A stretch of DNA of 64,000 nt from Cyanophora paradoxa CCMP329 (GCA_004431415.1 QPMI01000241.1:62001-126000); one strand, 5' to 3'; counted from the first letter of the stretch, positions 6,001-21,221 are shown. Notes: generated by a model not told the origin, from the sequence alone. Program-made: numbers and translations.

Positions 6001-6456
6001 AGCCCTACGCGCCCGGCCCTGCGACGCGTACCGCGTGCAGAGCTTCCTCGCGCTGACCGGCGACCCGTGCAAGGGCCGCGGCACGTTCAACGACGCCGAG
6101 GCGAGGTGCACGTGCACCTTGCCCTACGGCGGGCTCTATTGCGACGAGGAGCCCCAAGGTGCCCAGCGCTTTATAATTAAACTCCCTTGTTGTGCACCAA
6201 TAAGCAGATGCATCCCAATAATAACCATTGAGAATCCCTATAGCTAGCCCCAGCAAGTCGCGATACGTGTTGACGGTAAAACGGCCGGGCAGATGCGAAC
6301 AATTGCAAGAACGGGGGCAAGCCGGACGCCATCGACGGCGGCTGCTCCTGCAACGCTGGGCGGGCAGGCGGGCCGTTCTACTACGGCGCGGACTGCTCCA
6401 AGCAGTGCCCGAACGTCAATGAGGACTGCTCGTCGCGGATCATTGGACGCCTTTAA
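1..6456 (+). CDS. Large multi-exon protein (5'-partial) with WD40-like/beta-propeller segments and C-terminal EGF-like repeats; probably secreted or cell-surface
   Basis: More than 25 short exons join in frame across GT/GC-AG introns. WD40-like blades include GALSVHPEGPFVAVGTQSGVLK|VYD (~3015-3320) and SYLAAGDVFGNFVLMK. EGF-like motifs are CKGRGTFNDAEARCTCTLPYGGLYC (6068-6142) and CKNGGKPDAIDGGCSCNAGRAGGPFYYGADC (6304-6396). The 3' end is uncertain: there is a stop at 6454-6456, but a further YKCKC-containing exon near 6877 is possible. Confidence 0.7.
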
Positions 6457-6965
6457 CACATGATCATGATCATGATCATGATCAGCGCTAGCGCTGCCGC
6501 TTTTTTCGAAATAGACAGGTGAAGCATTTTAGGTGTATTGTAATGACAGCTTTTTGGGAAATCCTTTTGATGACAGCTGCAGCTTGGCTAGCCACAGATC
6601 AGTGGCTTATAGCTTACTATATATGTACGATTTTTTATCGGACCCGCGGCCGTCACTTGTTTCCATATGCGCATGCATGTACCATGCGTAGTCACTTTTT
6701 CTTTTTCGATCCAATAGGGGCCACCCAAATAAGGGCCACCCACCGGTATCCGGACCCCAGACGGCAATTTATATGCATATGCATGGTTCGGCAGGCCCTC
6801 ATGTTCAAGCCTAGCCTTCAAGCTATAGCAGCTAGAGCCTTCGATTCCTGCTCAATTTCGTGTCTTTGGCTCGTAGATATCGGTGCCTATAAGTGCAAGT
6901 GTGCGGATTCTTCGACAAGCCGCAGGCCTTTGATTCCTTGTTCTTCAATTCGTTTGATTTCAATA

Positions 6966-7037
6966 CTAGCAGACCGCGCCCGGCCCTGTGCAAGTGCGGC
7001 AAGTGCGGGCCGCGCGCGGAGGTGCAAGGGGGGGTAC
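6966..7037 (-). repeat. 3' terminus of the Helitron: subterminal inverted repeat, GC-rich hairpin and CTAG
   Basis: Minus strand reads GTACCCCCCCTTGCA-cct-CCGCGCGCGGCCC-(20-nt loop)-GGGCCGGGCGCGG-tctg-CTAG|T; 12 of 13 stem pairs are complementary. Confidence 0.85.
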
Positions 7038-7167
7038 GGGTGGAGAGTGCAGGGCACATGGATCACGTAAAATTAGAAATTGAGCTATAGAGTTATCTAG
7101 CATGAGCTTGTGCTTGAGTTGGATCTGGACTTCGTAGGAAGCACGCGCTTGCGATTGGGGGAAGCAT

Positions 7168-9648
7168 CTATCTTGAGGTTGTTATGCAGAGCAAGGACGA
7201 TGCTGACTCTGGACGGAAGAGAGTGTGAGGCATGTGGCAGGAACCAAGTGCAAATGGAATGGCAAACCGGTCTTGTGTGTTCGGACGCACTTGTACGAGA
7301 TGCTGGATAAGTTCACTCTGCAGATTTTTTGTCAAACGAGCTTTGCTGGTATTAAAGATAGAGAAAGCATGCACATGGAGGAGAACGAGATCGCCATGGC
7401 GTGGCGTGATTGAGATGCCCAGGTGAGGGAAGCAGATTGGATGTAGGTCGACGCTGGCTCGGCTAAGGGGGTCGATGAAGAGGATGGGGGTCAAGCAGGG
7501 ATCATGGTCAGTCTTGTCTACATGTACGCCAGATCGCCTGCAGAGAGAGCAAGATTGGGAAGAGAAGAGATGAGGAAAGATATTTGCAAAGCGTTTCGCA
7601 CTGACGAGGAGAGTTGATCCAGCACAGTCCAAAAAGACCTGCAGCTTGCAGTAAAGAGTTGGAAAATCGGGGAAGGAGGCTTGCTTGCAAGCACCGAAGT
7701 TGGCGGGGAGCGGAATGAGGCGCATGCAGCCGACAGTTGTAGCTCCCATTGAGTTATAGACTAAAGGAGAGAGGTGTTTTATCGCTGAGAGCATGTCTAT
7801 AATTGCAGGTGCTAGAAGCCTGCATACTGTCTGGATGCGGATGTCGGCCTTAGCTTTGTGTACTGCGCCCGCCAGGTACCCTGGGTGGACGAGCACGGGG
7901 GTTGTAGTGTATTTCCTCCAACAACCAAAGTCGGTGGATACTCCATGCGGATCTGTTGACTCGGGAGCATTCAGAATGTCTGGAGAGATAGAAGGACAGG
8001 GGTCCTCCAGAGCTGATGCACAAGCAGCCTTCAATCTAGATTCCTGAGCAGGCATGAGAGGAGAAGGTGCAAGAAGGAGCCATTGTATAGCCGAACACGC
8101 AGGCACACCTCCGATTTGCTGATGGGTTTCGTGGGCTTGGCAGATTCAGGAGTTGGAGGTAGTCCCGCGAAGGCGCAAGCAACCGCCTTGTGAGCTTGCT
8201 CTCGCCCTTGGGGGTCGAGAAAGTTGGGCAGCCAGACAATGGCGGGACCACTGACATTAGGAGCCTGGATGAGAAAGTCGACGCCACGCCGCAAGCCCCC
8301 TCCTGGAGTTGTTAGGGAGTTGGCGTGAAGCTGTGCAATTTGTAGAGTTAGCTGTAAACTGATAGGAGGACACAGCTACAAAGCTTACAACAGAGGGCAT
8401 GGACTTGGCGAATGATCGGAAGTTGAGAGAGGTGAGTGTTGATTTGGGGAACTTGCCGTTGGAGGGACGTGGAAGTGGGTAGCACAGGTCGATAGGGGTG
8501 GAATGCACGGCGGCGCGAACAGAAGCTAGTGCCGCTGCCCGTCCAACCCATGCACCCTTCTCGTATTCGGAGGCAATGAGCAGGGTCAGGCCAGCAAAGT
8601 CGATGCCCCCAGCATATGTTAGAGCGGGCTGATAAGAGCCACAAGTCATTGCCGGTTTGAGTACTGGAGGTACCTAATGAGGTAGTGTGAGATTGAGATG
8701 GATGAATTCGAGACGAGATGCAAGTAGAAGCACATGCACCGACATCGGGATTCCATCGTAGAAGATGTGTGAAAGCACTGAAGAAGCCGAGCGGTTGGCG
8801 ATGCGCGAAGGGATAACCGAGACTCCGGACGCCTTCAGTATGTCATGCTCGAGGAGATGGTTGAAGAGCTGTGAAGGTTCTGAAGCATCATCAAGTCATG
8901 CAATTGCAATCAAGGCGTGGCAAGGATGCGACCGCCCGCCCTGCATGCGCAAACCTGTAGCACACGGAGCTGAAGGCGTAGGCGATGTCGGCGATGAGCT
9001 CGAGAGCTGGGAAAAGCGCCGCGCCAGGCCAAGCGCGTCGGTATCATGTACTTGAGGGGCATCGTCGATGTTGCAAGGCACAGCTGCGGTCCTAGGATCA
9101 GGGATGCCTATGAGCAGTGAGGCGCGCGCCCTTAAGCTTCCTGACCAGTGGCTGTAACTAGCGCGGATCGAGCAATGCGCACCGCTGTGATCAAGAGGAA
9201 GAGGCATCGATGTCTCTGGGCAGGGAATGCCGGCGCCAGCAGCGATAGCAGTGCCGGCAGCGACGGCATGCGCATGCGTAGCTGCAGTTCTGCCTGCGGC
9301 GGCATGTGCAGCTGGAGATCTAGAGCCGGCGGCGGCGGCGGCCGCGGGCGCATGTGCAGCTGCAGATCTAGAGACGGCTGCAGGTGCGTGCGCAGCTTGA
9401 GAGCCGGCTGCATCGGTTGTTGATCTGTTGGCTTGATAGCGATCGAAGCCGGCTCTAAGCGCTGCAAGGTGGGTGCGCTTTAGCTCTCGCATCACGGCTG
9501 CCTGTTTCGTCGCGGCCGCTGTCTTAGCTATAGGATGGCTGTGGCTGGACGCGCTGGCTTCTGGAGTGATAGTAGCTGCAGTTGAGTGCTCCTTTGGCTC
9601 GCGGGCAGGCGCACGAGGCGGCGGTCGAAGTTTCGATCGGTTGTCCAT
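7168..9648 (-). CDS. TET/JBP-like 2-oxoglutarate/Fe(II)-dependent dioxygenase encoded by the Helitron (6 exons, 719 aa)
   Basis: Exons 9648-8955, 8879-8740, 8673-8389, 8330-8109, 8043-7375 and 7317-7168 join via GT-AG introns into 2160 nt with no internal stop. C-terminal motifs: IVWLPNFLD, FGCWRKYTTTP, NIFPHLFSS...GVHVDKTD (HxD, 7516-7524), FPHLGISITPRHGDLVLL, distal His in ELIQHLV (7300-7302), and RFAIPF (Arg at 7267-7269 with an aromatic at +5). Confidence 0.78.
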
Positions 9649-10109
9649 CGATCTTCTATCGCGCGTCGCGCGCGTATTCGACTTGATGTCGGGGGCGCTG
9701 AGGAGTGCACAGTGCAGAGCAGGAGAAGCTCTTTTGGACGGATCCGATGGCTTCGTTAAGCGTCCGTGCTTTCCTGAGAAAACTAGGAGGAAAGTGTTCG
9801 CTCTTCAAATCTTGAAGGGAAATCTTTTGCAATGTAAGCTTTGCGTACGTGCGCATGCGCATAAGTAGCTAGCGCTAGCGCTATAGATGTGCATGCGCAT
9901 GTGGAAGAGTGGGCTCACGCTCGAGTGAGGCCAGAGCTTGGACAGGCTGATGGAAAGGGACAGAGCTAGGAAAGCTGTGAACAATGTAGTGTCATTGTAC
10001 ACAAAACCAAAACCTAACTAGTGCCAGCTACGGGGATCAGCACGCCCTAGCTAGCAATAGCACTAGCTACATAGCTAGCGCTGCAGCGTCCCCTCGAGGC
10101 GAGGACACT

Positions 10110-11580
10110 TCACTTGCGGGACTTCTTGGCCTCCGAAGATGAGGCGCTGGCTCCAGATGCGCGCTTGGAGCTGGATGCCTGCGGGGCTGCAGAGGCAGCC
10201 GGAGTCTGCGGGGCCGCAGCCGGGGCCTGCGGGGCCGCAGCAGCGGGCGGCGTGGCGGCGAGGGAGGTGGTCTTGTAGATCTCGAGTCTGATTGAAGAGC
10301 ATGAGGTTCAACAGTGACACACAAGGCCTAGCTATAGAGAGAAAAGCTCACCCGGCCTCGATGGCCTCAACGGCAGCTGGCGTGACGTCGCTGCCAACAT
10401 TGTAGGTGGTGCAGGGCCCGGTGGTGATGGTGATAGACCCGTTGTCCTGCTCGATGCGGACCCAGTCGAGGTAGAAGTCAGTCTTGATGTTGAAGTCCAG
10501 AGCTTCTTTTCCGTAGAGGTTCAGGGTCGCCATGCGGCTGAGGACAGGCAAAGATGTGTCAGAGTAAGCCGATGTTCTCAAAAAGGAAATTCGAATGCAC
10601 CCAGAAGTGTCGACGACCTGGAAGGAAGTGCGCTTGGCACCGCCCTTCGTGGGAGAATCCCACGATGTCTCGGACTTGGCAATCACGCGGCCAGCGACAG
10701 CTGTGTGTGGAAGTCAGCCAATAGGGACACAGAAGAAATAACAAAGCACGGGAGCACCGGCGATGATACGGCGCTTGCCGGTTTGCAGGAAGTCCTCCAG
10801 AGGTGTGAAAATATCAACCACCTCGAGGCCGACTTCCTCAGCCGTTTTCTGTACAGAAGTTATGCAATTAGCCTTTCGATTCGAAATTTGATTTGAAAAG
10901 GATCACCTCGGGATAGGGCATGAAGACAGTGTTCGTGATCCCCACAACCCTGTCCCCAATGGTGTACTTCAGGCCCTCGTAGTCATCGTACTCCTTGTCC
11001 GTGAGCTCCACAATATCTCCACAGAGCTTGACGGCGCAGTAGCCCTTTGCGTCCTGAGGTTTCGATTTTGAGCTCAGTACTGGAGTGTCAGGCCGGATTT
11101 CAAAGTAATACTTACAACAGCAGCGCGGGAGGCGTCGAGTTGCGGCTGGAGATGGTTGATCGTGTCCTGGCCCAGAATAGTGATGGTGGAAACAGGGCAG
11201 AAAGCCTCAGACGTCTGCGATTGAAAGACATGCATGAGCTGAAAGAGCCGAATTCGAAAGGCTTTTGCTTCGTTGAGGTGGGAGATTACCGTGCAAGAGA
11301 GGAGCATGATCTTGGCCCCAGCAGCAGAGTTCCGGAGCTTCACGAGCTCCCCATTGCGGACGATGAGAGCATAGCCATCCGCAAACTGGCCAGGACGGGC
11401 GAGATCCTTGGGTTCAGTAGGGGTGAGAGAAGCGCTGTTGCGAGAGCGTCTGCTCACGCATATGCTGAAGTCAGCAAGGCACAAGGCCTCGCAGCGGGCG
11501 CGCGTGCGCGCGCAGAGCACAGGATGGCTTGGCGTGGGCGCTTACCCAGAGACCTTCTTGGAGGAGTTGAACAAAGACAT
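10110..11580 (-). CDS. RPA70-like OB-fold single-stranded DNA-binding protein encoded by the Helitron (8 exons, about 335 aa)
   Basis: Spliced ORF from MSLFNSSKK to KKSRK* with GT-AG introns. The second domain FTPLEDFLQTGKRRIIAAVAGRVIAKSE...GGAKRTSFQVVDTSGRMATLNLYGKEALDF fits the RPA70 OB-fold pattern (D-x-SG...L-x-L-W/Y-G-x-x-A). An Ala/Pro-rich tail ends in a bipartite NLS-like KR...KKSRK. Confidence 0.75.
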
Positions 11581-11745
11581 GATGAGCGCAAGGCAAGAAA
11601 GCTACAGCTGTAGAGCGCTGGGCTGCGGCAAACGCCGAGGTCCTGGAGGAAAGTGTGGTCTGCTCCCATCGCTCGACGGGTTTTGAGGGTCCGTATAATG
11701 AGAATATGATTACAATCCATCGTTTGGTGATCATGGCGCTATCAT

Positions 11746-11920
11746 GGCGATCTGGGAATTCGAAACTGCGATCTGGGAATATGCGATCTGTAGCTGGATG
11801 ATCTGGGAATCTCCGATCTGGGAATAATAGCAGCTGACAGATCTTATCCGAAGGGGGGAGAATCTGCGAATCTGCAGCTGATCTGGAAATCTGCGATCTG
11901 CGAATTGGCTACCTGCGATC
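11746..11920. repeat. Cluster of short degenerate repeats (GCGATCTGGGAAT core) upstream of the RPA-like gene
   Basis: About ten GATCTG/AATCTG-containing units, e.g. gcgatctgggaatt, gcgatctgggaata, atgatctgggaatc, ccgatctgggaata. Confidence 0.7.
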
Positions 11921-12154
11921 TCCGTAGCAGGCAGGCAGTCTTGCTGGCGTGAATTTGTATACTGCATTCTCTCTGCATCTCTGGAACTGTGCTTGCAAAG
12001 CTGAAACGGTTGCACAGCTGCGTTTGTAGGGGTACACCAAGTAAAGTGGGGGATGAACTCAGGCGAAGCAGCTTTCAGTGTTTGCAGTGATCATGATTGC
12101 AGGCGACTGCAATTGAGCGCGGCGCATCGCAGAGCATCCTTATCGGTGATCGTT

Positions 12155-12650
12155 AGCGCGCGGCGGCATGCGCACTTGGTAAGCGCGCGGCGGCATGCGC
12201 ACTTGGATCACAGGGACTGGACGAAGCTTCAATGTGTCTGGCTTAGTACTTACGCCACGCCGCAGCATTGCGCAGCGCTAGCTACGAAGCCAAGCACCCC
12301 GAGCAGCAGCTGCTTTGTGAGCATCGAAACGCATGGACTGCGTGAGGAAGCTGGACGCGCACCATGGCGCGCTGACGAAGCTTCAATGTGCGGAGCTGCA
12401 TGTGACGCCACGCCGCCGCGTTGCGCAGCGGCCTGCGTTGCGCAGCGGGCTGCGCGTACGTTGCCCACTGGCCCGCGCGGCACTTGAAGAGCACCTTCAC
12501 TTGGTGAGCACACTCATTCGCTTTTGGTTTGCAGGGCCGGGCTTGAGCGAACCTTAAATGTGCCTAGCCGCCGCCGCGTTGCGCAGCGCTAGCTGAAGAG
12601 CATGATCAGGTTGACATGGAGCCACACCTGCATGAGGAAGCTGCACTCGC
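12155..12650. repeat. Internal direct repeats between the RepHel and RPA-like genes
   Basis: Exact 25-bp duplication AGCGCGCGGCGGCATGCGCACTTGG (12155-12179 and 12182-12206). Three degenerate longer units sharing aatgtg...cgccgc...ttgcgcagcg start near 12220, 12375 and 12555. Confidence 0.65.
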
Positions 12651-12874
12651 TGGCATCGCACACGGGGGGCGTAGCGCATTTCTCAATCCCTGCTGGATCA
12701 GGCAAGTCGCGCGCTAGCCGACTCTCAAGGCCCTCGAGCTCTGCAGATCTAGATGTACCTCCTGTTTGGACCCATCTCTAAACGTTTACATGGTTTTGCA
12801 GGAGAAGAGAAATTTTTCGAAGCAATCGAAGGTGTAAATTGCAATTGCAAGGAGCTACAAGGAGAGGAGGATGA

Positions 12875-15800
12875 TCATGAGCTTGCAATGCCAAGCTCGG
12901 CTAAGGTTTGCTTCTCGAGCTTCTCCAGGCGCAGGTACTCGTCATTGATCTTCTTGCGGGTGTCTGGGTGACTCATGAAGTGAGACGCTTGTAGGGGCTG
13001 GCGGAGTCGAATGCCGGCAAGTGTCTTGCAACGGCTGATTGCGACGTAGACCTGGCCGTACGCGAAGGGCCGGTCGGCATCAATGTACACTGCATCACAT
13101 GTCGAGCCCTGGCTCTTGTGGATTGTGATGGCGAAGGCAAGTTCAAGAGGGAACTGGGAGCGGAACATCTGTACTCCCTGATAGCTGAGCTTGCTTGTAC
13201 AGGGAATCAAGGGCACAACAGCGTAGTCGGCCTCAGGAGGAACAGGGATGAAGGAGGCTCCGCGGTACTGGGCCTTCGGGATCCGGACAAGGAGAATAGG
13301 CGGCTGGTACGAGCAGCGCTGTTTGACCATATCTGCTGCTGAGTGCGGAAGGGGCTCAGACCCGGGTGCGAGGAGGATGTCGTGAACTTCGACGATCGTG
13401 CCATTGGTAAGGCCCAGCGCTACATCCACATTTCGAGTGATCATCACCCTTGCCCCTCGCGCCAGGGTCACGCTGGCTGGGAGGCCGTTGCGCTTCCACT
13501 TCGCATCCTTGCCGAGGACCGATGTGAAAAGTCGTGCAGCACGTTCACTTCCAAGTGGAGGTGCAAGAACTTGTCTCTTCTTGCGGCCACGACGCTGTGG
13601 CTTTGCTGCGTATTCATCTAATGTTGCATGCAATCATCAGTGAAGGAAAGAGTCTTCGGAGTTGGGGCAGGCACTGTACCATCATCGCTGTCATCAGCTG
13701 CACGAGCCTCTGCCTCAGCATCAGCTGAATCGGCGAACAGGTCCTCGTTTGTCTCTCCCTCTTCATTGAGCTCGGGATCCGCTTGCTGATTTCCGTCACC
13801 ATGGGCCCGGGTTGCTGGTGCGAAGGACTCAGAGCTGAAGGCGTGGTGTGCGTAGATGGTCATGGGTGCATGAGCACGTCCATGTGAGCGCAGCTCTCTC
13901 ATGGAGCACGCATTCAACTCGTCCTTGATAGCATGCGTTGTGGCAAGCAAAAGCGAGCCATTGGGGGGAGGCTGGCCAGGCATGTACTGCTTGTTCAGCT
14001 CAGCCAGATCGGAGAGCAGAGTTGATGTCTCCCCTACCCTCCTTCTGGTAAGGATCCCTCCAAGACGAGCACATCCATCCTGCCTGAATAGTTTCCGCAG
14101 GATGATTGCTCTCGGGATTCTCTTCCAAAGCCGGAGACCAGCCTGCAAAGACAAAAAGCATGAGCACAATTCAAGGTTCCCGCCATGCTAAAAGTACGCA
14201 CATTCGACTCTGGGACACCAATCTCGTTAGCGGCATAGCGTTTAATAACACCCTCGTACAGGGCGCGGTCAAGAACGGGAGGCAGCTGGTGAAAATCTCC
14301 AAACATGATCACATGGAGGCCTCCGAAGGGTCGATTGCCGTCGAGGATGCTACGGAGCCGCTCATCAATACGAGCAAGCAGCTTTGCTCCAAGCATGCTG
14401 TACTCATCGATGATGAGAAGCTGCACGTCTTTGAGCTCCCTCAACAGAGCCGTCCGGACGTTGTCGGTCATGATGGTGGACCTGCGAATGCCGAGGTGTA
14501 GGAACTTGTGGATGGTCATTCCGCCCACAAGGGTGGCCGCCTTGCCAGTTGTTGCACACACGACTACTGGCCCGTGTGTTGTTGTGCGTTCGAAAGGACA
14601 TACCATTCGAGCGCCCCGAACAACAGCACGAATGACCTTGCTTTTTCCAGTGCCCGCAGCCCCTCCGACAATGAGCTCCAGCTGCTCTGTGCGCCCATCT
14701 GAATCGATTCCACGTCGCTTCGTAAGGAAGTCCATGGCCAAGTCGTAGATAACCCGTTGACCGCTGGGGTCCAGATCTGCACCTGGGTCATCGGCTGTAC
14801 CACGAGGATCGCAAGGCCTGTGATAAGGAAGAAGACCAGATCAGGCCCAATTTTGCATCCAGATCTGCAGTAAGGAATGAAGGAACGTACTGGCTTTGAT
14901 TGCTGAGGTTATGCTTGTCTGCATCAGCCTCAAGCTCAGCACGGAAAGCAGCTCTGACTGCTTGTCCTTGCTGGATCAGAAAGGTTTGTGCTTCATGGTA
15001 CATCCTTGTTGAGGCATGACGTAATTCTGGGGGACCATCCTCAGCATCATCTCCTGCAGCATCGCTGCCGGCATCGTTGTTGTCAAGCAGGGCGTCCTCG
15101 AACGTGTACTCATCTTCATCATCGCCGTCATTTTCTCCCTGAGATGAGGCATGTGCTCCTTGGACGCCTTTACTTGCATTAGCTTCACGTTGCTTCAGAT
15201 GTTCCTCACGCATGCGTCGCAGACGAATCTCCTTCTGAATGAGCTCCCGCATGTCGGCATCGATGTCATTGTAGCAGTCGCGCAGGTGCTGTACTGCTGT
15301 CTTGCCCTCAGGAACAATGTCAGACAAGCGGCGCCATGGTTTGTACAGGAAGAGGATGTTGTAGGCCGAGTCTTCATCATCGATGTTGACCGGGACATGA
15401 GGATGAACAAGAACCACGGCATCCTTCTCCCTACGCATGATGGTGCGATTTGCAAGATTTCTGGCCCTCGCCGTCCTGTGCTGGCTGTGAGGAATATTGC
15501 AGGTTTCTCACGTGTATTTCAAGTCTTGTGCACCTGCCTCTGTTGACGTCATCTTCTCGGGAACGCTTCCATCGGGATGCGTACTTGTAGCAACATAGGT
15601 CTTCCCATTGCTTCGGCTCTGCGTCATTTTAGAGGAGGACTAGTGCCCCATTTTGAGTGAAGCTCAAGGTTCTAACCTTCGTCTTGCAAGGGGACTGCAC
15701 CACCAGGCCGCTGGGAGTACTCCTTTGCAATGGCTGGGAGGAGGTCCTCGTCCTCATCATCTGGAAGCATGGAGTCGTTGCCCTCAGAAGCAAACGTTGC

Positions 15801-18800
15801 AGCTGGAGCAGGTGCCCCTGATTGCGACGCAATGACGACGTGCCCCTCACCAGCCCGACGAACGCTGACGTGCACACATGGGCGTGGCTTTTCAGATAGG
15901 TCCTTGCGAAGCAAAAGCAGAGCAGCCATTTGGCTGTGCACAACGCGAACGCCAACGAGGGAGTTGCCAACGGCCTGAATGAGACGTCGGCGAGGAGCGT
16001 TGCGCTCAACATGCGCTGCAAGCTGCTCCCGGATGTGGGCAAGGAGGTCCTTGAAATCCGGCTCGCACTTGGTGCTGTAGTTGGCCACATACTGAGCAAC
16101 ACCATAGGCGTTGACTACGACCTTCAAGTTCATGTTTGCCCTCCAGATGATGAGAAGGACAGGAGAGTACTCTACGACGTGAACATTATCACGTTTGAGG
16201 TGAATTTCAAGCTTCAATTCCGCTTTGTCCTCCTCTTCTTTGAACTCGATCCAAGTTGCTTCAACCTCGCCTTCTTTAGGGAAGTTGAAGCGACAAGTGC
16301 TGCCTGTGAAAGAAGACAGATCTTAGAAAGAAAGGCCTAGGGAGGTCACTTTCAAGGAAAGAGCAAGGCGCACCCTTTTTAAAGCAGGTGCCTCCTGGCT
16401 TGCATTTGTGGATCTGGCATTCACCAACAAGCTCATGCAGGAATCTGAGCAATGCTGGATTCGAAAAGGATGTGGCTGGAGGATCTTGGGCGCAGGCTTG
16501 TGGGGTGCATGGATGGGGTGCTGGTCCCGCATCTGCCTCGGCGTGGTCTCCTTCTGAAGATGGATCTCCAGGCTCTGGTGCTGCTGTCTCCGGCTCCCAT
16601 ACCCTCCATGCTGACACATACATGTCCAGCACCTCTGCAAGTACTTTTCGACCTTCTTCATCCGCAATGAAGTCGCTGGGGTCCTTCCACTCTCCAAGAG
16701 ATGCAAAGAACAGCATGCACCACAGAAGGGCATGTACGTGCAGGCTGCCGCGTGCCTGTATAGAAACAAACTCAGCAGTTGTTTGAAAGCCTTTCTGACT
16801 CAATAGCCTCACCTGACACTCATACCGCCAGAAGAAGTCCGTTAAACGTCCCAACGGGTGTGCAATGTGGTCTTTGATCACCTCTTCAAAGAAGGTCTGC
16901 CACCTGCATATATAGCAAGAATGTCGGAATTTGTCAAGCATATGAGCTGAATCGTCATACCTACGTGTGAAGAGCTCAACACAAAGTACAGGGTTGGCAG
17001 CAACAAGGCGAGCCCGCTGAGCTCTGGAGAGAGCACGAGCTTCCTCTATTGTGGCAACGAGGCCGGCAGCAACAGCGAGCTCAGGCCAGATGGTGTCCGC
17101 CGCAGAGAGAGTGAGAAACCAGGTGGGAACTTTCACCTGTGCATGTGTTTCACTACCAATTTCTGTGGTCATCATATGCTGCCTCATGCACACCTCAGAG
17201 AGTGCCGGAGAGTTGATCATTGCCATGATTTCTGCTCTGCGACTCTTCCAGTATGCAAAGGTATCACGAAGGCTGACGAACACAGCGTCACCAATGACTG
17301 TAAGCATATTTGAAATCAATCAGTGCACCTGTCAAACCAAGGCATCAGTCGTTGCATAAGCTCCTTGGTTCTTTCCTTTGTGACTCCATTCACAACATCC
17401 ATTATGTCTGCCATTGATGGAAGCTTGCCATTGTTAATGCTTTTGTCCAGGCGATAAGCAACTTTGCTGGCCTTCTGCCTCTGCAAATCGGGTGGGATTT
17501 CAGAGGTGAGTCATTGTAGTACTGCATGAAGAAATTAAACCTGAGTCAAGTTGATGCAGTAGAAAAGGAAGGTGTGATCACGGGCAAAGCGTTGATCGTA
17601 GAATCGAAGGCAATGCTCAATGTACTCATCGAACTCGAGAAGATCTGGGTTGTCGCTATACGCTCCCCGTCCATTCGGAAACAGGTGCGGACAGATGAGC
17701 GCAAATAGATTCCGATTCTCGTACTCATTGACAGGGCTGTCCAGCCTCGGAATCTCCACTGTTGGACGTTGGGCCGACCTGCTGTATCGTCATTTTCAGA
17801 TTGAATTCATCGATCAGATTGGGATGATGGACACCTTGTCTTCTTCTGAGTTTCTGAAAGAATGCGCTGGACACTCTCGTCAGGGTCTTCATCAGTAGTA
17901 GAAAACAGCACGCAAGACTGATGCTGGCTCAGTGAAGCAAGAGCCTCGTCGCCCATTTCCTCATCAGGACCATCCTCGTCGAGGAGTAGCTCAGCAAGCT
18001 GCTCAGCTGGTACGTCCCCTGCTGGCGTTGGAACAGTGCTCTCTGCAACTGGTATATCAATTCGCCCTGAATCATAAGCACGAAGGTTCTCTTCGCTGAT
18101 TTCAACTCCTTCATACAGGGCATTGTTCTTCAACTGCATGTGCAGTGTGAGAACCTTAGTCAGGCTCTTATCCATTAGAATGCGAACCGTTACCAACCAA
18201 CGCAGAGCCGAGCGAAGTTTCTCTGGCCGAACTGTGAGTTTGGGAGGCCGGGAGTCGCCCTCCGTTCGAATGTACACCATGTCAGCCTCATCGGGAAGGC
18301 GTGGCAGCCTGCTTATGACGGTGCCAAGCGGGTTCCAGTAGGAGATGCAGTTGCCTCTGGAATACCGCTGACCAGAAGGATGGTGAGTGAAAACTTTGAC
18401 AAGAGCACAGGCCCGAGAGATGAGCCTGATCTCCTGCTCGTTCAGATTGCTGAGTGCGTCAGGGATCCTCCCGAAGTCGAAAGCTGCTATGGATGTCTGA
18501 GGTGCACATTTCTTTGCCACAAGGATACCGGTGCACTTATTGCAAATCCGGAAATGTGGAACGTCGCATCCACATGCAGAGGTGCACAGTTCGCAACACT
18601 TGCTTCGATGCGTCCCATGATGGCTGTCTTCCTTCAGCACAGCGAGCACCTTGCCGTCTTTTTCACGAATGTATGCTGGAGGCATAAGAAGGGATCCAGG
18701 CTTGTCAATATCCTCCCTGCGAATGAAGATTTCTTAATGTGCTGCGACTCATGAGTACCATTGGTGGCTAACAATTTGAAATACAGGTACTGAAGAGCAG

Positions 18801-19815
18801 GATGGTCGACTGGGAAGAAAGGATGGTCCGAGAACTGAGATGAAGGGTTGAGCTCTCCGCAACAGGCACATATGTTGAAGGTGCTCTCCTTCCCCCACCG
18901 CTTCATAAATTTAGATATAAGTCGGGCCACTGAATCTGCAGGAGGGAGCTCTGTACGGCAGAGTTAGTGATCCTCTGGTATGCAACCACAACAAGGACTC
19001 ACTGGAGCTGCTGTGCGAGCGCAATTGATGAGAACGCAGGCTGGCTGCTGATGCATACGAATTGCCACAGTCGGCACAGAGATGCAATCTCTCAGACCCA
19101 CGGTGTTCTGATGGTTCAGAATCGATCTCCTCTCTGTCCACGTATGCATGGCATTTGCCTCGCCGCCGATGGCGCTGGAAAGCAGCTGGATCCATTTTCT
19201 TGTGACACGTTTCACAAGTTTGCATAGAGCCTTCTCCAACTCCATGTTCATTCTGTAGTCAGCATTAGATGGGTACTGAAGTGTAAATTAAAGGAAGACT
19301 GAACATCAACTACCACTGACCATTGTGGATGTCCAGTACCTTCCTGCTCCCTTGAACTCCAGTGTCCGTCGGAGTCGGCGAGGTCGGTGGTCATGATCAG
19401 ACTCAACGTCATGATCGTTTCGGGCCGCAGCGCTAGCAGCAGCTGCAGCCAAGGAGGAGCTGGCATCGTCCTCCAAAGCATTGCCCTGATCTTGGGCTTG
19501 CGCCCCGTGTATAGAATCAGAATCAATGTCCATTGGCATTGCAGCATCATTTGCGTGTGTGCTGTCATGCGTATGCATGTGGTTTGCATGTTCACATTCA
19601 TGAGCACATTCAAGAGCATTGACAGCAGTCGGAAGAGCAGGGCTCCGATGCACAAGATAGTGCCACCGTCCTCTGTTTCGCTCTTGAATGCACACACGGT
19701 TTGCTGCAATGATATAGATGTCAGGAAAAAGATAAAAGAAAGGAAAAAAGAGACGCACATATGCTGGAAAAAGTTTGAGGGTGTGGAAGGGATGGTGAGA
19801 TCGAATCGCGGCCAT
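12875..19815 (-). CDS. Helitron RepHel transposase: zinc fingers, DUF6570-like region, HUH Rep domain and PIF1-family helicase (multi-exon)
   Basis: C2H2 finger CADCGNSYASAASLRSHQLRSH. DUF6570-like FDFGRIPDALSNLNEQEIRLIS...VRPEKLRSALRWL...NNALY. Rep motifs PTWFLTLSAAD, ECQ|ARGSLHVHALLW (HUH) and YVANYSTK. PIF1 motifs GAAGTGKS, ATTGKAA, LIIDEYSM, PFGG...GDFHQLPPV, QFPLELAFAITIHKSQGST and GQVYVAISR. The exon joins I checked are in frame. The start may lie further upstream, because a splice acceptor precedes the ATG. Confidence 0.95.
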
Positions 19816-19895
19816 ATCCGCCTGCAGCAAGCAAAACAATAGGAGAATAGGAGCAGCGTGAGCTCGAGGCCCCACCGGAGAAGAGGCGCGCGAAG

Positions 19896-20430
19896 AGGCG
19901 CGCGAACTCACCGTGAGGCTGAGAAGAAGATGCGCATGAGGAGCTGTTCGACGACAGGCCGCGATCTGCAACCGGGCGCCCAATCAGAGAGGTGGCCGCG
20001 CGTGGCGCACGAGCTCTTGGCGCGATAGCTAGTTGTGCGGCCTGCGCGCGAGCTCGCCTTCTGGTTGAGAAGAAGAAGTAGTGCTCGGAGCGACAGCAAA
20101 CGACAGGCCGCGATCTGAAACCGGGCACCCACTTAGACAGGTGGCCGCGCGCGGCGCACGAGCTCTTGGAGCTAGTTGTGCGGCCGGCACGCGAGCTCGC
20201 CTTCTGGTTGAGAAGAAGAAGTAGTGCTCGAAGCGACAGCAGACGACAGGCCTCGATCTGCAACCGGGCGCCCAGTCAGAGAGGTGGCGGCGCGGAGCAG
20301 GCTAGCTAGGGGGCCGCTGGATCGTGAGCTCTGCGGCCGCCGGCTCGCGGGCTCACCTTGCGGCTGAGAAGAAGAAGATGCGCAAGACGAGCTGTTCGAC
20401 GACATGGCGAGATCTGCACCCGAGAGGTCA
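19896..20430. repeat. Tandem array of about four degenerate ~145-155-bp units inside the Helitron 5' region
   Basis: GAGAAGAAGA...CGACAGGCCGCGATCTGCAACCGGGCGCCCA.TCAGAGAGGTGGC recurs at about 19921, 20067, 20210 and (more degenerately) 20366. Confidence 0.85.
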
Positions 20431-20570
20431 TGCGCCGTCGGCGTCTATGCACACCCATCTCGGGATTGCCGGGCGGCATGGGAGTTCACCTTTCATCTCG
20501 CAAGAGAGTGTCATGTTTGAAGAAAACGCAATCGACGAGCTCGGATCTGCGGGCGGCGGACGCGGGGCAG

Positions 20571-20822
20571 TCAGAACCATCCGATGATCGGCGCACACTC
20601 GGCCAAGCGGCGCGCACCGGAACGCGGCGTCGCGGGCGCCTTCTTCCTGCACTGGCGAACGTGCTTATACAGGTTGTCCTGCCGAGTGAAGTGCTTCCCG
20701 CAGCGAGTGCATTTGCCGCCCGGATGGCAGCCGCGCGGGTCGGAGCAAGGCTGCAAGCTCGAGCAAAGCTCAACTTCGCTTGCGACTACGTCTGTCGGCC
20801 GCGGACCCGGGCGAAGGGCCAT
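20571..20822 (-). CDS. Zinc-finger exon (C2H2-type fold ending in Cys) inside the Helitron; a small gene or an upstream exon of RepHel
   Basis: KCTRCGKHFTRQDNLYKHVRQC has the C-x2-C-x3-F-x5-L-x2-H-x3-C spacing. An in-frame ATG lies at 20822. Downstream splicing is unresolved. Confidence 0.55.
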   Translation of the reverse strand: MALRPGPRPTDVVASEVELCSSLQPCSDPRGCHPGGKCTRCGKHFTRQDNLYKHVRQCRKKAPATPRSGARRLAECAPIIGWF

Positions 20823-21194
20823 GACGACGCAGAAGAACGAAGTACGGGTACGGCAACACGATCTCCTCCAACTCTCAGGAGCGCTTTTTCTCGGCGCCCG
20901 GTACAACAGGTACTTGAGGCGGCCTAGCGCGCCGCACGCCGCTTCTCGAGCCCGGGCATGTATGACAAAGTTTGTAGAGCGCGTCGAGAGCAATCAGGAG
21001 CACGTGGTCCGGCGTGTATAGCGATAGCAGGTGAGGCGCGACTTCGACATGTTTGCGCAGCCCCGCCCCTGCATTTTTTTCGGCCGCTCGCAGCGGCTAC
21101 GATGCGATCACACCTATACGAGAGCGCATGCAAAGAATCGCATCTTACAAAAATTGCTAACACAGAAAGTACGCCGCACCAACTCACCAGGGGA

Positions 21195-21221
21195 GCAAGG
21201 GAGGGGGTACCCCCCCTTGCA
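21195..21221 (-). repeat. 5' terminus of the Helitron: terminal inverted repeat folded with an adjacent partial inverted copy
   Basis: Plus strand GCAAGGGAGGGGGTACCCCCCCTTGCA is self-complementary apart from a 2-nt bulge; its last 15 nt are the exact reverse complement of 7023-7037. Confidence 0.85.

What the first reader, a model, noticed from the sequence alone, without database searches (positions are those of the whole stretch)
6966..21221. Complete Helitron encoding its own TET/JBP-like dioxygenase alongside RepHel and an RPA-like protein: a candidate self-unsilencing rolling-circle transposon
Seen: three co-oriented spliced genes lie inside one pair of matching termini and share the element's lower GC content and intron style. 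The dioxygenase stop is about 200 bp from the 3' end. Known: TET/JBP enzymes oxidise 5-methylcytosine or thymine in DNA; in fungi they travel with Kyakuja-Dileera-Zisupton transposons, and plant Helitrons carry RPA70-like genes. I do not know of a described Helitron lineage with a resident TET/JBP gene. Inference: this is a stable module rather than a captured host fragment, and it may erase or rewrite repressive methylation on the element or mark its DNA intermediates.
Basis: partly seen in the sequence, partly recalled or inferred. Interest (0 to 1): 0.95.

Follow-up and report, generated by a model that had tools for sequence, protein, structure and literature searches.

The report
Algal Helitron carrying a TET-like enzyme
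A complete rolling-circle transposon in what is probably the alga Cyanophora carries its own spliced, transcribed gene for an enzyme of the family that oxidises methylated DNA; the pairing is real but is already described in fungi and in Chlamydomonas, so this is a new example rather than a new kind.

Summary
Confirmed: a 14.26-kb Helitron2 (HLE2) on the minus strand, 21221 to 6966. It has 15-nt terminal inverted repeats, a 3' hairpin, a T^T target and DUF6570. It holds three co-oriented genes: RepHel, an RPA-like OB-fold gene and a TET/JBP-type dioxygenase.

The protein is 683 aa, not 719, and the corrected core shows the TET pattern HxDxxD...H...RxS...H. One base-stacking aromatic is replaced by Ala. 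HMM searches found nothing and the fold failed, so the family call rests on motif spacing and ESM-Atlas neighbours.

The novelty premise fails. TET-carrying Helitron1 and Helitron2 are described in fungi (PMC12730594), and Helitron2-2/2-3_cRei carry TET/JBP genes in Chlamydomonas (bioRxiv 2022.06.16.496473; 2026.10.09.758095), with the same anti-silencing hypothesis.

What is new is a third host lineage (probably the glaucophyte Cyanophora paradoxa, which CpG-methylates its repeats) and a very divergent enzyme. A 'stable module' is unproven: the interior is single-copy, and only the last ~70 bp is multicopy. The scan noted other TET/JBP-like genes elsewhere in this genome, several near mobile elements (unchecked). 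New member of a known kind.

The parts
6966..21221 (-). Complete Helitron2 (HLE2) element, 14,256 bp, inserted at T^T, 46 bp after the stop of a host RING-finger gene
   Evidence: loose ends of other copies at 6962-6967
21207..21221 (-). 5' terminal inverted repeat (15 nt); can fold back on 21195-21205 (this hairpin is not better than shuffles, z -0.67)
7023..7037 (-). 3' subterminal inverted repeat, identical to the 5' one
6966..7019 (-). 3' GC-rich hairpin followed by the terminal CTAG; the last ~70 bp is present in many other genomic copies
   Evidence: z -2.88; tables 2, 7, 8
12875..20822 (-). RepHel transposase gene (start and exon structure inferred, not RNA-checked): C2H2 fingers, DUF6570, Helitron_like_N, PIF1 helicase
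   Evidence: a stop-free parse is possible but not unique
17810..18685 (-). DUF6570 domain, the HLE2 marker
   Evidence: E 2.8e-20; marker status PMC11417382
16068..16830 (-). Rep HUH motif (YECQ|ARGSLHVH across a 57-nt in-frame intron) and catalytic Tyr motif YVANYSTK
13031..14663 (-). PIF1-family helicase motifs: GAAGTGKS, IIDEYSM, GDFHQLPPV, AITIHKSQG, GQVYVAISR
19951..20294 (.). 143-bp tandem repeat (2.4 copies) in the 5' part of RepHel; looks like a duplicated exon+intron unit
   Evidence: exon reading inferred
10110..11580 (-). RPA-like OB-fold gene, 331 aa, 8 exons, 7 introns seen in RNA contigs
   Evidence: Atlas first hit REPA_OB_2 0.93; no Pfam hit
7097..9648 (-). TET/JBP-type dioxygenase gene, 683 aa, 9 exons: 9648-8955, 8879-8740, 8673-8389, 8330-8109, 8043-7695, 7638-7602, 7537-7375, 7317-7268, 7208-7097
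   Evidence: Atlas Tet_JBP clusters 0.95
7184..7926 (-). Catalytic core: R490 (in GCWRKY), N572, H581-x-D583, D586, G624-D625, H636, R647-x-S649, A653, H655
   Evidence: residue map of CMD1/TET2/NgTET1 from PMC7854593

Best explanation
An autonomous Helitron2 whose RepHel nicks and peels off one strand for rolling-circle transposition, with its RPA-like protein binding the single-stranded intermediate. It carries as long-resident cargo an Fe(II)/2-oxoglutarate TET/JBP dioxygenase. The most likely job of the enzyme is to oxidise host-laid 5-methylcytosine at CpG, which weakens silencing of the element and probably of other repeats too, since nothing shows it is targeted to its own locus. SHOWN: termini, gene anatomy, splicing and transcription of the TET and RPA genes, the catalytic motif pattern, and CpG depletion of the element. 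INFERRED: enzyme activity, 5mC as substrate, any effect on silencing, RepHel expression, host identity.
For: HLE2 hallmarks met. The RNA-corrected core has HxD, the N4-reading Asp at H+5 (as CMD1 D350, NgTET1 D234), the distal His, the 2OG-binding Arg and His at R+8 (as TET2 H1904, NgTET1 H297). GD-to-H spacing equals that of NgTET1. 24 of 30 Atlas neighbours are Tet_JBP clusters and the other 6 carry no common family. Element CpG o/e is 0.72-0.85 with TpG/CpA excess, against 1.1-1.4 in host DNA of similar GC, the footprint of past CpG methylation. C. paradoxa has 32% CpG methylation on repeats, and its methylated genes are mostly silent. The same architecture recurs in fungi and Chlamydomonas, and CMD1 and CcTET from transposons act on 5mC.
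Against: No significant HMM or phmmer match to TET/JBP and the fold failed. The base-stacking aromatic at R+6 is Ala653; the same change cuts CMD1 activity eightfold. Transcripts were seen in one study only; eight other RNA-like runs hold 0-7% of the words. The element is CpG-depleted all the same, so protection is at best partial. One autonomous copy cannot show a stable module.
Confidence: 0.55

Rival explanations
1. Mobile passenger: a real TET/JBP gene of a family that moves between unrelated mobile elements of this genome, as in rust fungi. This Helitron holds it for now, and the enzyme acts genome-wide or barely at all, with no special benefit to this element.
For: Kojima reports frequent passive transfer between transposon superfamilies. 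Scan notes list at least six other TET/JBP-like genes in this genome, beside other kinds of element (unchecked). The interior is single-copy, and the many other Helitron notes for this genome do not mention TET.
Against: The gene is intact, spliced at 8 introns, and shares the element's GC, CpG footprint and intron style, which suggests long residence under selection.
Confidence: 0.25
2. A TET/JBP-fold enzyme with another substrate or chemistry: thymine, 6mA, RNA, or the single-stranded rolling-circle intermediate held by the RPA-like protein, so that it marks new copies rather than erasing 5mC.
For: Ala653 replaces the conserved stacking aromatic. The sequence is extremely divergent. The ~250-aa region before the core (residues ~232-480) is unassigned. 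CcTET also acts on 6mA and CMD1 adds glyceryl groups.
Against: Asp586 at H+5 favours cytosine over thymine. His at R+8 is the TET type, and the CMD1-type Trp at H+13 is absent (Ile594, by spacing only).
Confidence: 0.13
3. Not a nucleic-acid dioxygenase (for example a prolyl hydroxylase-like 2OG enzyme), or a recently captured host gene.
For: No statistically significant profile match, and no usable structure model.
Against: The HxDxxD and RxS-x5-H pattern fits TET, whereas prolyl hydroxylases bind 2OG with Lys and AlkB with RxxxxxR (own knowledge). No Atlas neighbour is of another 2OG family. No second locus at 85% identity or more appears in two DNA runs, and the composition is element-like, not host-like.
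Confidence: 0.07

Closest known systems
Chlamydomonas reinhardtii Helitron2-2_cRei and Helitron2-3_cRei (TET/JBP-carrying Helitron2; bioRxiv 10.1101/2022.06.16.496473, 10.64898/2026.10.09.758095)
   Same: Helitron2 in a GC-rich alga with resident TET/JBP genes; 8 of the 11 TET homologues of the reference strain sit in Helitrons; anti-silencing role proposed.
   Different: Different host lineage (probably a glaucophyte); one autonomous copy here against several polymorphic copies there. Whether the two TET genes or RepHels share ancestry could not be tested (no sequences at hand).
Fungal TET+ Helitrons (Kojima 2025, PMC12730594): Helitron1 of Puccinia and Pezizales, Helitron2 of Agaricus bisporus
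   Same: TET/JBP gene inside complete Helitron termini; same proposed escape from methylation silencing.
   Different: Non-fungal host. The motif here is HxD, not the HxE of the PE type that covers the fungal Helitron2 and Pezizales cases.
HLE2 (Helitron2/Helentron) as defined in HELIANO (PMC11417382)
   Same: Short TIRs, 3' stem-loop after the right repeat, T^T target, DUF6570, RPA/OB cargo; an AlkB-type 2OG domain is also known as HLE2 cargo.
   Different: No AP-endonuclease domain seen (so not Helentron); RPA lies downstream of RepHel, whereas HELIANO finds it mostly upstream in HLE2; the dioxygenase is TET/JBP-type rather than 2OG-FeII_Oxy_2.
CMD1, NgTET1, TET2, CcTET
   Same: Fe-binding triad, N4-reading Asp, C-terminal Arg and R+8 residue at matching spacings.
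   Different: Stacking Phe/Tyr replaced by Ala; no CMD1-type Trp at H+13; no detectable overall sequence similarity.

Membership tests
Helitron2 / HLE2 | RepHel with HUH Rep and PIF1 helicase | tested here: met
   Pfam Helitron_like_N 5e-12, PIF1 6e-23; all catalytic motifs located
Helitron2 / HLE2 | 12-16 nt terminal inverted repeats | tested here: met
   15-nt exact pair
Helitron2 / HLE2 | 3' stem-loop downstream of the right repeat | tested here: met
   z -2.88
Helitron2 / HLE2 | Insertion between T and T | tested here: met
   T on both flanks; other copies diverge just beyond 6965-6962; the empty site itself was not seen
Helitron2 / HLE2 | DUF6570 marker | tested here: met
   E 2.8e-20
Helitron2 / HLE2 | RepHel falls in the HLE2 clade of a tree | not tested
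   No close relatives found; metagenome helicase matches mostly 27-46%
Helentron | AP-endonuclease domain fused to RepHel | tested here: not met
   The last exon ends just after helicase motif VI; Pfam shows no endonuclease domain
Helitron1 | 5' TC start, A^T target, no TIR | tested here: not met
   Starts TG, T^T target, TIR present; only the 3' CTAG is shared
TET/JBP dioxygenase | HxD...H iron triad | tested here: met
   H581, D583, H636 in RNA-confirmed exons
TET/JBP dioxygenase | 2OG-binding Arg in the last strand (RxS) and Asp/Asn at H+5, His/Arg at R+8 | tested here: met
   R647-V-S649, D586, H655 against the map in PMC7854593; matched by spacing, not by structure
TET/JBP dioxygenase | Base-stacking Phe/Tyr at R+6 | tested here: not met
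   Ala653; F416A lowers CMD1 activity eightfold but does not abolish it
TET/JBP dioxygenase | Significant match to the Tet_JBP profile | tested here: inconclusive
   None for exon-sized pieces; the core is split over five exons and the joined search was left out; Atlas neighbours are Tet_JBP at 0.95
TET/JBP dioxygenase | Double-stranded beta-helix fold closest to TET/JBP structures | tested here: inconclusive
   Single-sequence model of the unspliced ORF had pLDDT 32; not searched
TET/JBP dioxygenase | Oxidation of 5mC or T in DNA | not testable with these tools
   Needs an enzyme assay
RPA70-like Helitron cargo | OB-fold of the RPA type | tested here: inconclusive
   Atlas REPA_OB_2 0.93 with all named neighbours OB-fold; no Pfam hit

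The most novel reading that the evidence does not exclude
An independently acquired, deeply divergent TET/JBP subfamily of glaucophyte mobile elements with a remodelled base pocket (Ala for the stacking aromatic) and an unassigned N-terminal domain. It would make a new DNA modification or act on the single-stranded rolling-circle intermediate together with the element's RPA-like protein.
Probability: 0.12. Interest if true: 0.75.

Novelty: new member of a known kind. Interest (0 to 1): 0.33.

Why it matters
It extends TET-carrying Helitrons from fungi and green algae to a probable glaucophyte, which suggests that rolling-circle elements pick up methylation-oxidising enzymes repeatedly wherever hosts silence repeats by CpG methylation. 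The host has published methylomes and is culturable, and this element is complete and single-copy, so the still untested anti-silencing hypothesis can be checked at one mappable locus. The enzyme is divergent enough to be worth one assay, since the other algal transposon TET (CMD1) turned out to have new chemistry. The concept itself is not new.

Tried and rejected
Searches for relatives of the dioxygenase, by reference on unjoined pieces, gave nothing: Pfam, phmmer of 1.84 billion representatives, the word-indexed search, PDB sequences, phage tblastn (chance hits only). A phage TET/JBP profile built from Cooper gp2 relatives did not detect the exon pieces; it barely detects NgTET1 itself (E 0.01), so this is no evidence against. 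AlphaFold on the unspliced ORF failed and was not searched. A Rep-domain homologue search gave nothing. The 3' end pattern is absent from metagenomes. 48 distant helicase loci hold no detectable TET or RPA relative, but most are short and too distant to be informative. An ab initio splice parse of RepHel was stop-free but not unique.

Full report
OBSERVATION. Between 6966 and 21221 the window drops to 55% GC, against 63% and 70% in the flanks. The 15-mer TGCAAGGGGGGGTAC occurs twice in 64 kb, as an inverted pair: at the extreme 5' end of a minus-strand element (21221-21207) and 57 bp inside its 3' end (7023-7037). 0.12 matches are expected by chance. Between the inner repeat and the end lies a GC-rich hairpin (z -2.88), then CTAG at 6969-6966; both flanks are T. 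DNA contigs of two runs show many other loci that share only the last ~70 bp and diverge at 6962-6967, which fixes the 3' boundary and points to a family of non-autonomous or diverged copies. The interior lies on one unbranched 8.6-kb contig at about flank depth, and no second copy at 85% identity or more was laid on the TET and RPA genes. The element sits 46 bp after the stop of a host RING-finger gene.

GENES. All three are on the minus strand. RepHel (about 20822 to 12875) has C2H2 fingers, DUF6570, Helitron_like_N and PIF1 matches. The HUH, tyrosine and helicase motifs are all present. A stop-free parse exists but is not unique, and its transcription was not checked. The middle gene (11580-10110) has 7 introns seen in RNA contigs and codes for 331 aa; the ESM Atlas places its C-terminal part with RPA OB-folds (0.93), Pfam does not see it. 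The product is 683 aa and the stop is 131 bp from the element end.

IS IT TET/JBP? The corrected core reads, in order, R490, N572, H581-V-D583, D586, G624-D625, H636, R647-V-S649, H655. PMC7854593 maps the same positions in CMD1, TET2 and NgTET1: HxD...H, an Asp/Asn five residues after the first His that reads N4 of cytosine, a 2OG-binding Arg, a stacking Phe/Tyr six residues after it and a His/Arg eight after. All are met by spacing except the aromatic, which is Ala653; that change lowers CMD1 activity eightfold. The Trp that excludes 2OG in CMD1 (H+13) is Ile594 here, so 2OG is the likelier co-substrate (inference from spacing). The GD-to-His spacing equals that of NgTET1. In the Atlas, 24 of 30 neighbours are Tet_JBP clusters at 0.95, the rest have no common family, and many members are basidiomycete. 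No HMM or phmmer search was significant and the single-sequence fold failed. I put TET/JBP membership at about 90%.

HOST. Run names are coded. An earlier scan note names Cyanophora paradoxa. The window's GC, the short introns, contig sets of 68-116 Mb and runs of 2012 and 2019 fit the published genome (67.6% GC, 99.9 Mb, mean intron 86 bp). I did not verify the species directly. C. paradoxa methylates 32% of CpGs, preferentially on repeats, and its methylated genes are mostly silent (PMC12344493). The element has CpG o/e 0.72 (RepHel body), 0.74 (TET core) and 0.85 (RPA) with TpG/CpA excess of 1.2-1.4. Host stretches of similar GC have CpG o/e 1.1-1.4. That is the footprint expected from long exposure to CpG methylation. 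It also shows the TET gene has shared the element's history rather than being a fresh host capture.

MECHANISM. Most likely: RepHel drives rolling-circle transposition, the OB-fold protein binds the displaced strand (established Helitron biology, inferred here), and the dioxygenase oxidises 5mC laid by the host, loosening silencing of the element and probably of other repeats in trans (0.55). Caveats: activity is untested. The element is CpG-depleted despite the enzyme. Rivals: a passenger from a TET family that moves among this genome's mobile elements (0.25); other chemistry or substrate (0.13); not a nucleic-acid enzyme or a recent capture (0.07).

COMPARISON AND NOVELTY. The element meets the HLE2 definition of HELIANO on every structural point tested, lacks the Helentron endonuclease and is not Helitron1. 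Kojima 2025 reports complete TET+ Helitron1 in Puccinia and Pezizales and TET+ Helitron2 in Agaricus, and proposes escape from methylation silencing. The Chlamydomonas v6 preprint says most of at least ten further TET/JBP genes lie in Helitron2-2_cRei and Helitron2-3_cRei, and a 2026 preprint counts 8 of 11 in a Helitron. I found no paper naming both Helitron2 and Cyanophora, and the Cyanophora methylome paper does not mention Helitrons. So the host lineage and the divergent enzyme appear new, within the library searched.

VERDICT. A real, well-formed element; a new member of a known kind. Interest 0.33. The most novel reading not excluded is new chemistry or a single-strand substrate (probability 0.12).

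Noticed in passing
window 6966-7037: The last ~70 bp of the element is shared by many other loci: 85 contigs laid per DNA run, about 30 only partly fitting, summed depth about 90-100 times the flank in that bin. One variant end carries extra bases beyond CTA. Suggests a large non-autonomous or diverged family.
   Followed up: partly
window 6966-11700: Only one of six RNA-like studies (runs X15, X16) holds the TET and RPA transcripts; eight other runs hold 0-7% of the words. Expression may depend on condition or culture.
   Followed up: no
window 19878-20422: 143-156 bp tandem repeat in the RepHel 5' region that looks like a repeated small exon plus intron, with GC donors in some copies, coding Ser-rich units.
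   Followed up: partly
window 11770-11915 and 12150-12650: Short GATCTG-rich repeats and three ~155-bp-spaced repeats between RepHel and the RPA-like gene. RPA transcript contigs run about 220 nt beyond 11800, so this is probably its 5' UTR and promoter.
   Followed up: no
window 6451-6965: The 0.5 kb beyond the element's 3' end is AT-rich (46% GC), mildly CpG-depleted and shares short motifs with the element's intergenic DNA; possibly a remnant of another element.
   Followed up: no
window 8109-8879: Residues ~232-480 of the dioxygenase, between an Ala-rich low-complexity N-terminus and the catalytic core, have no Pfam match in the exons tested; a possible targeting domain.
   Followed up: partly
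window 10110-11580: The RPA-like gene lies downstream of RepHel, the arrangement HELIANO reports for HLE1 rather than HLE2.
   Followed up: no
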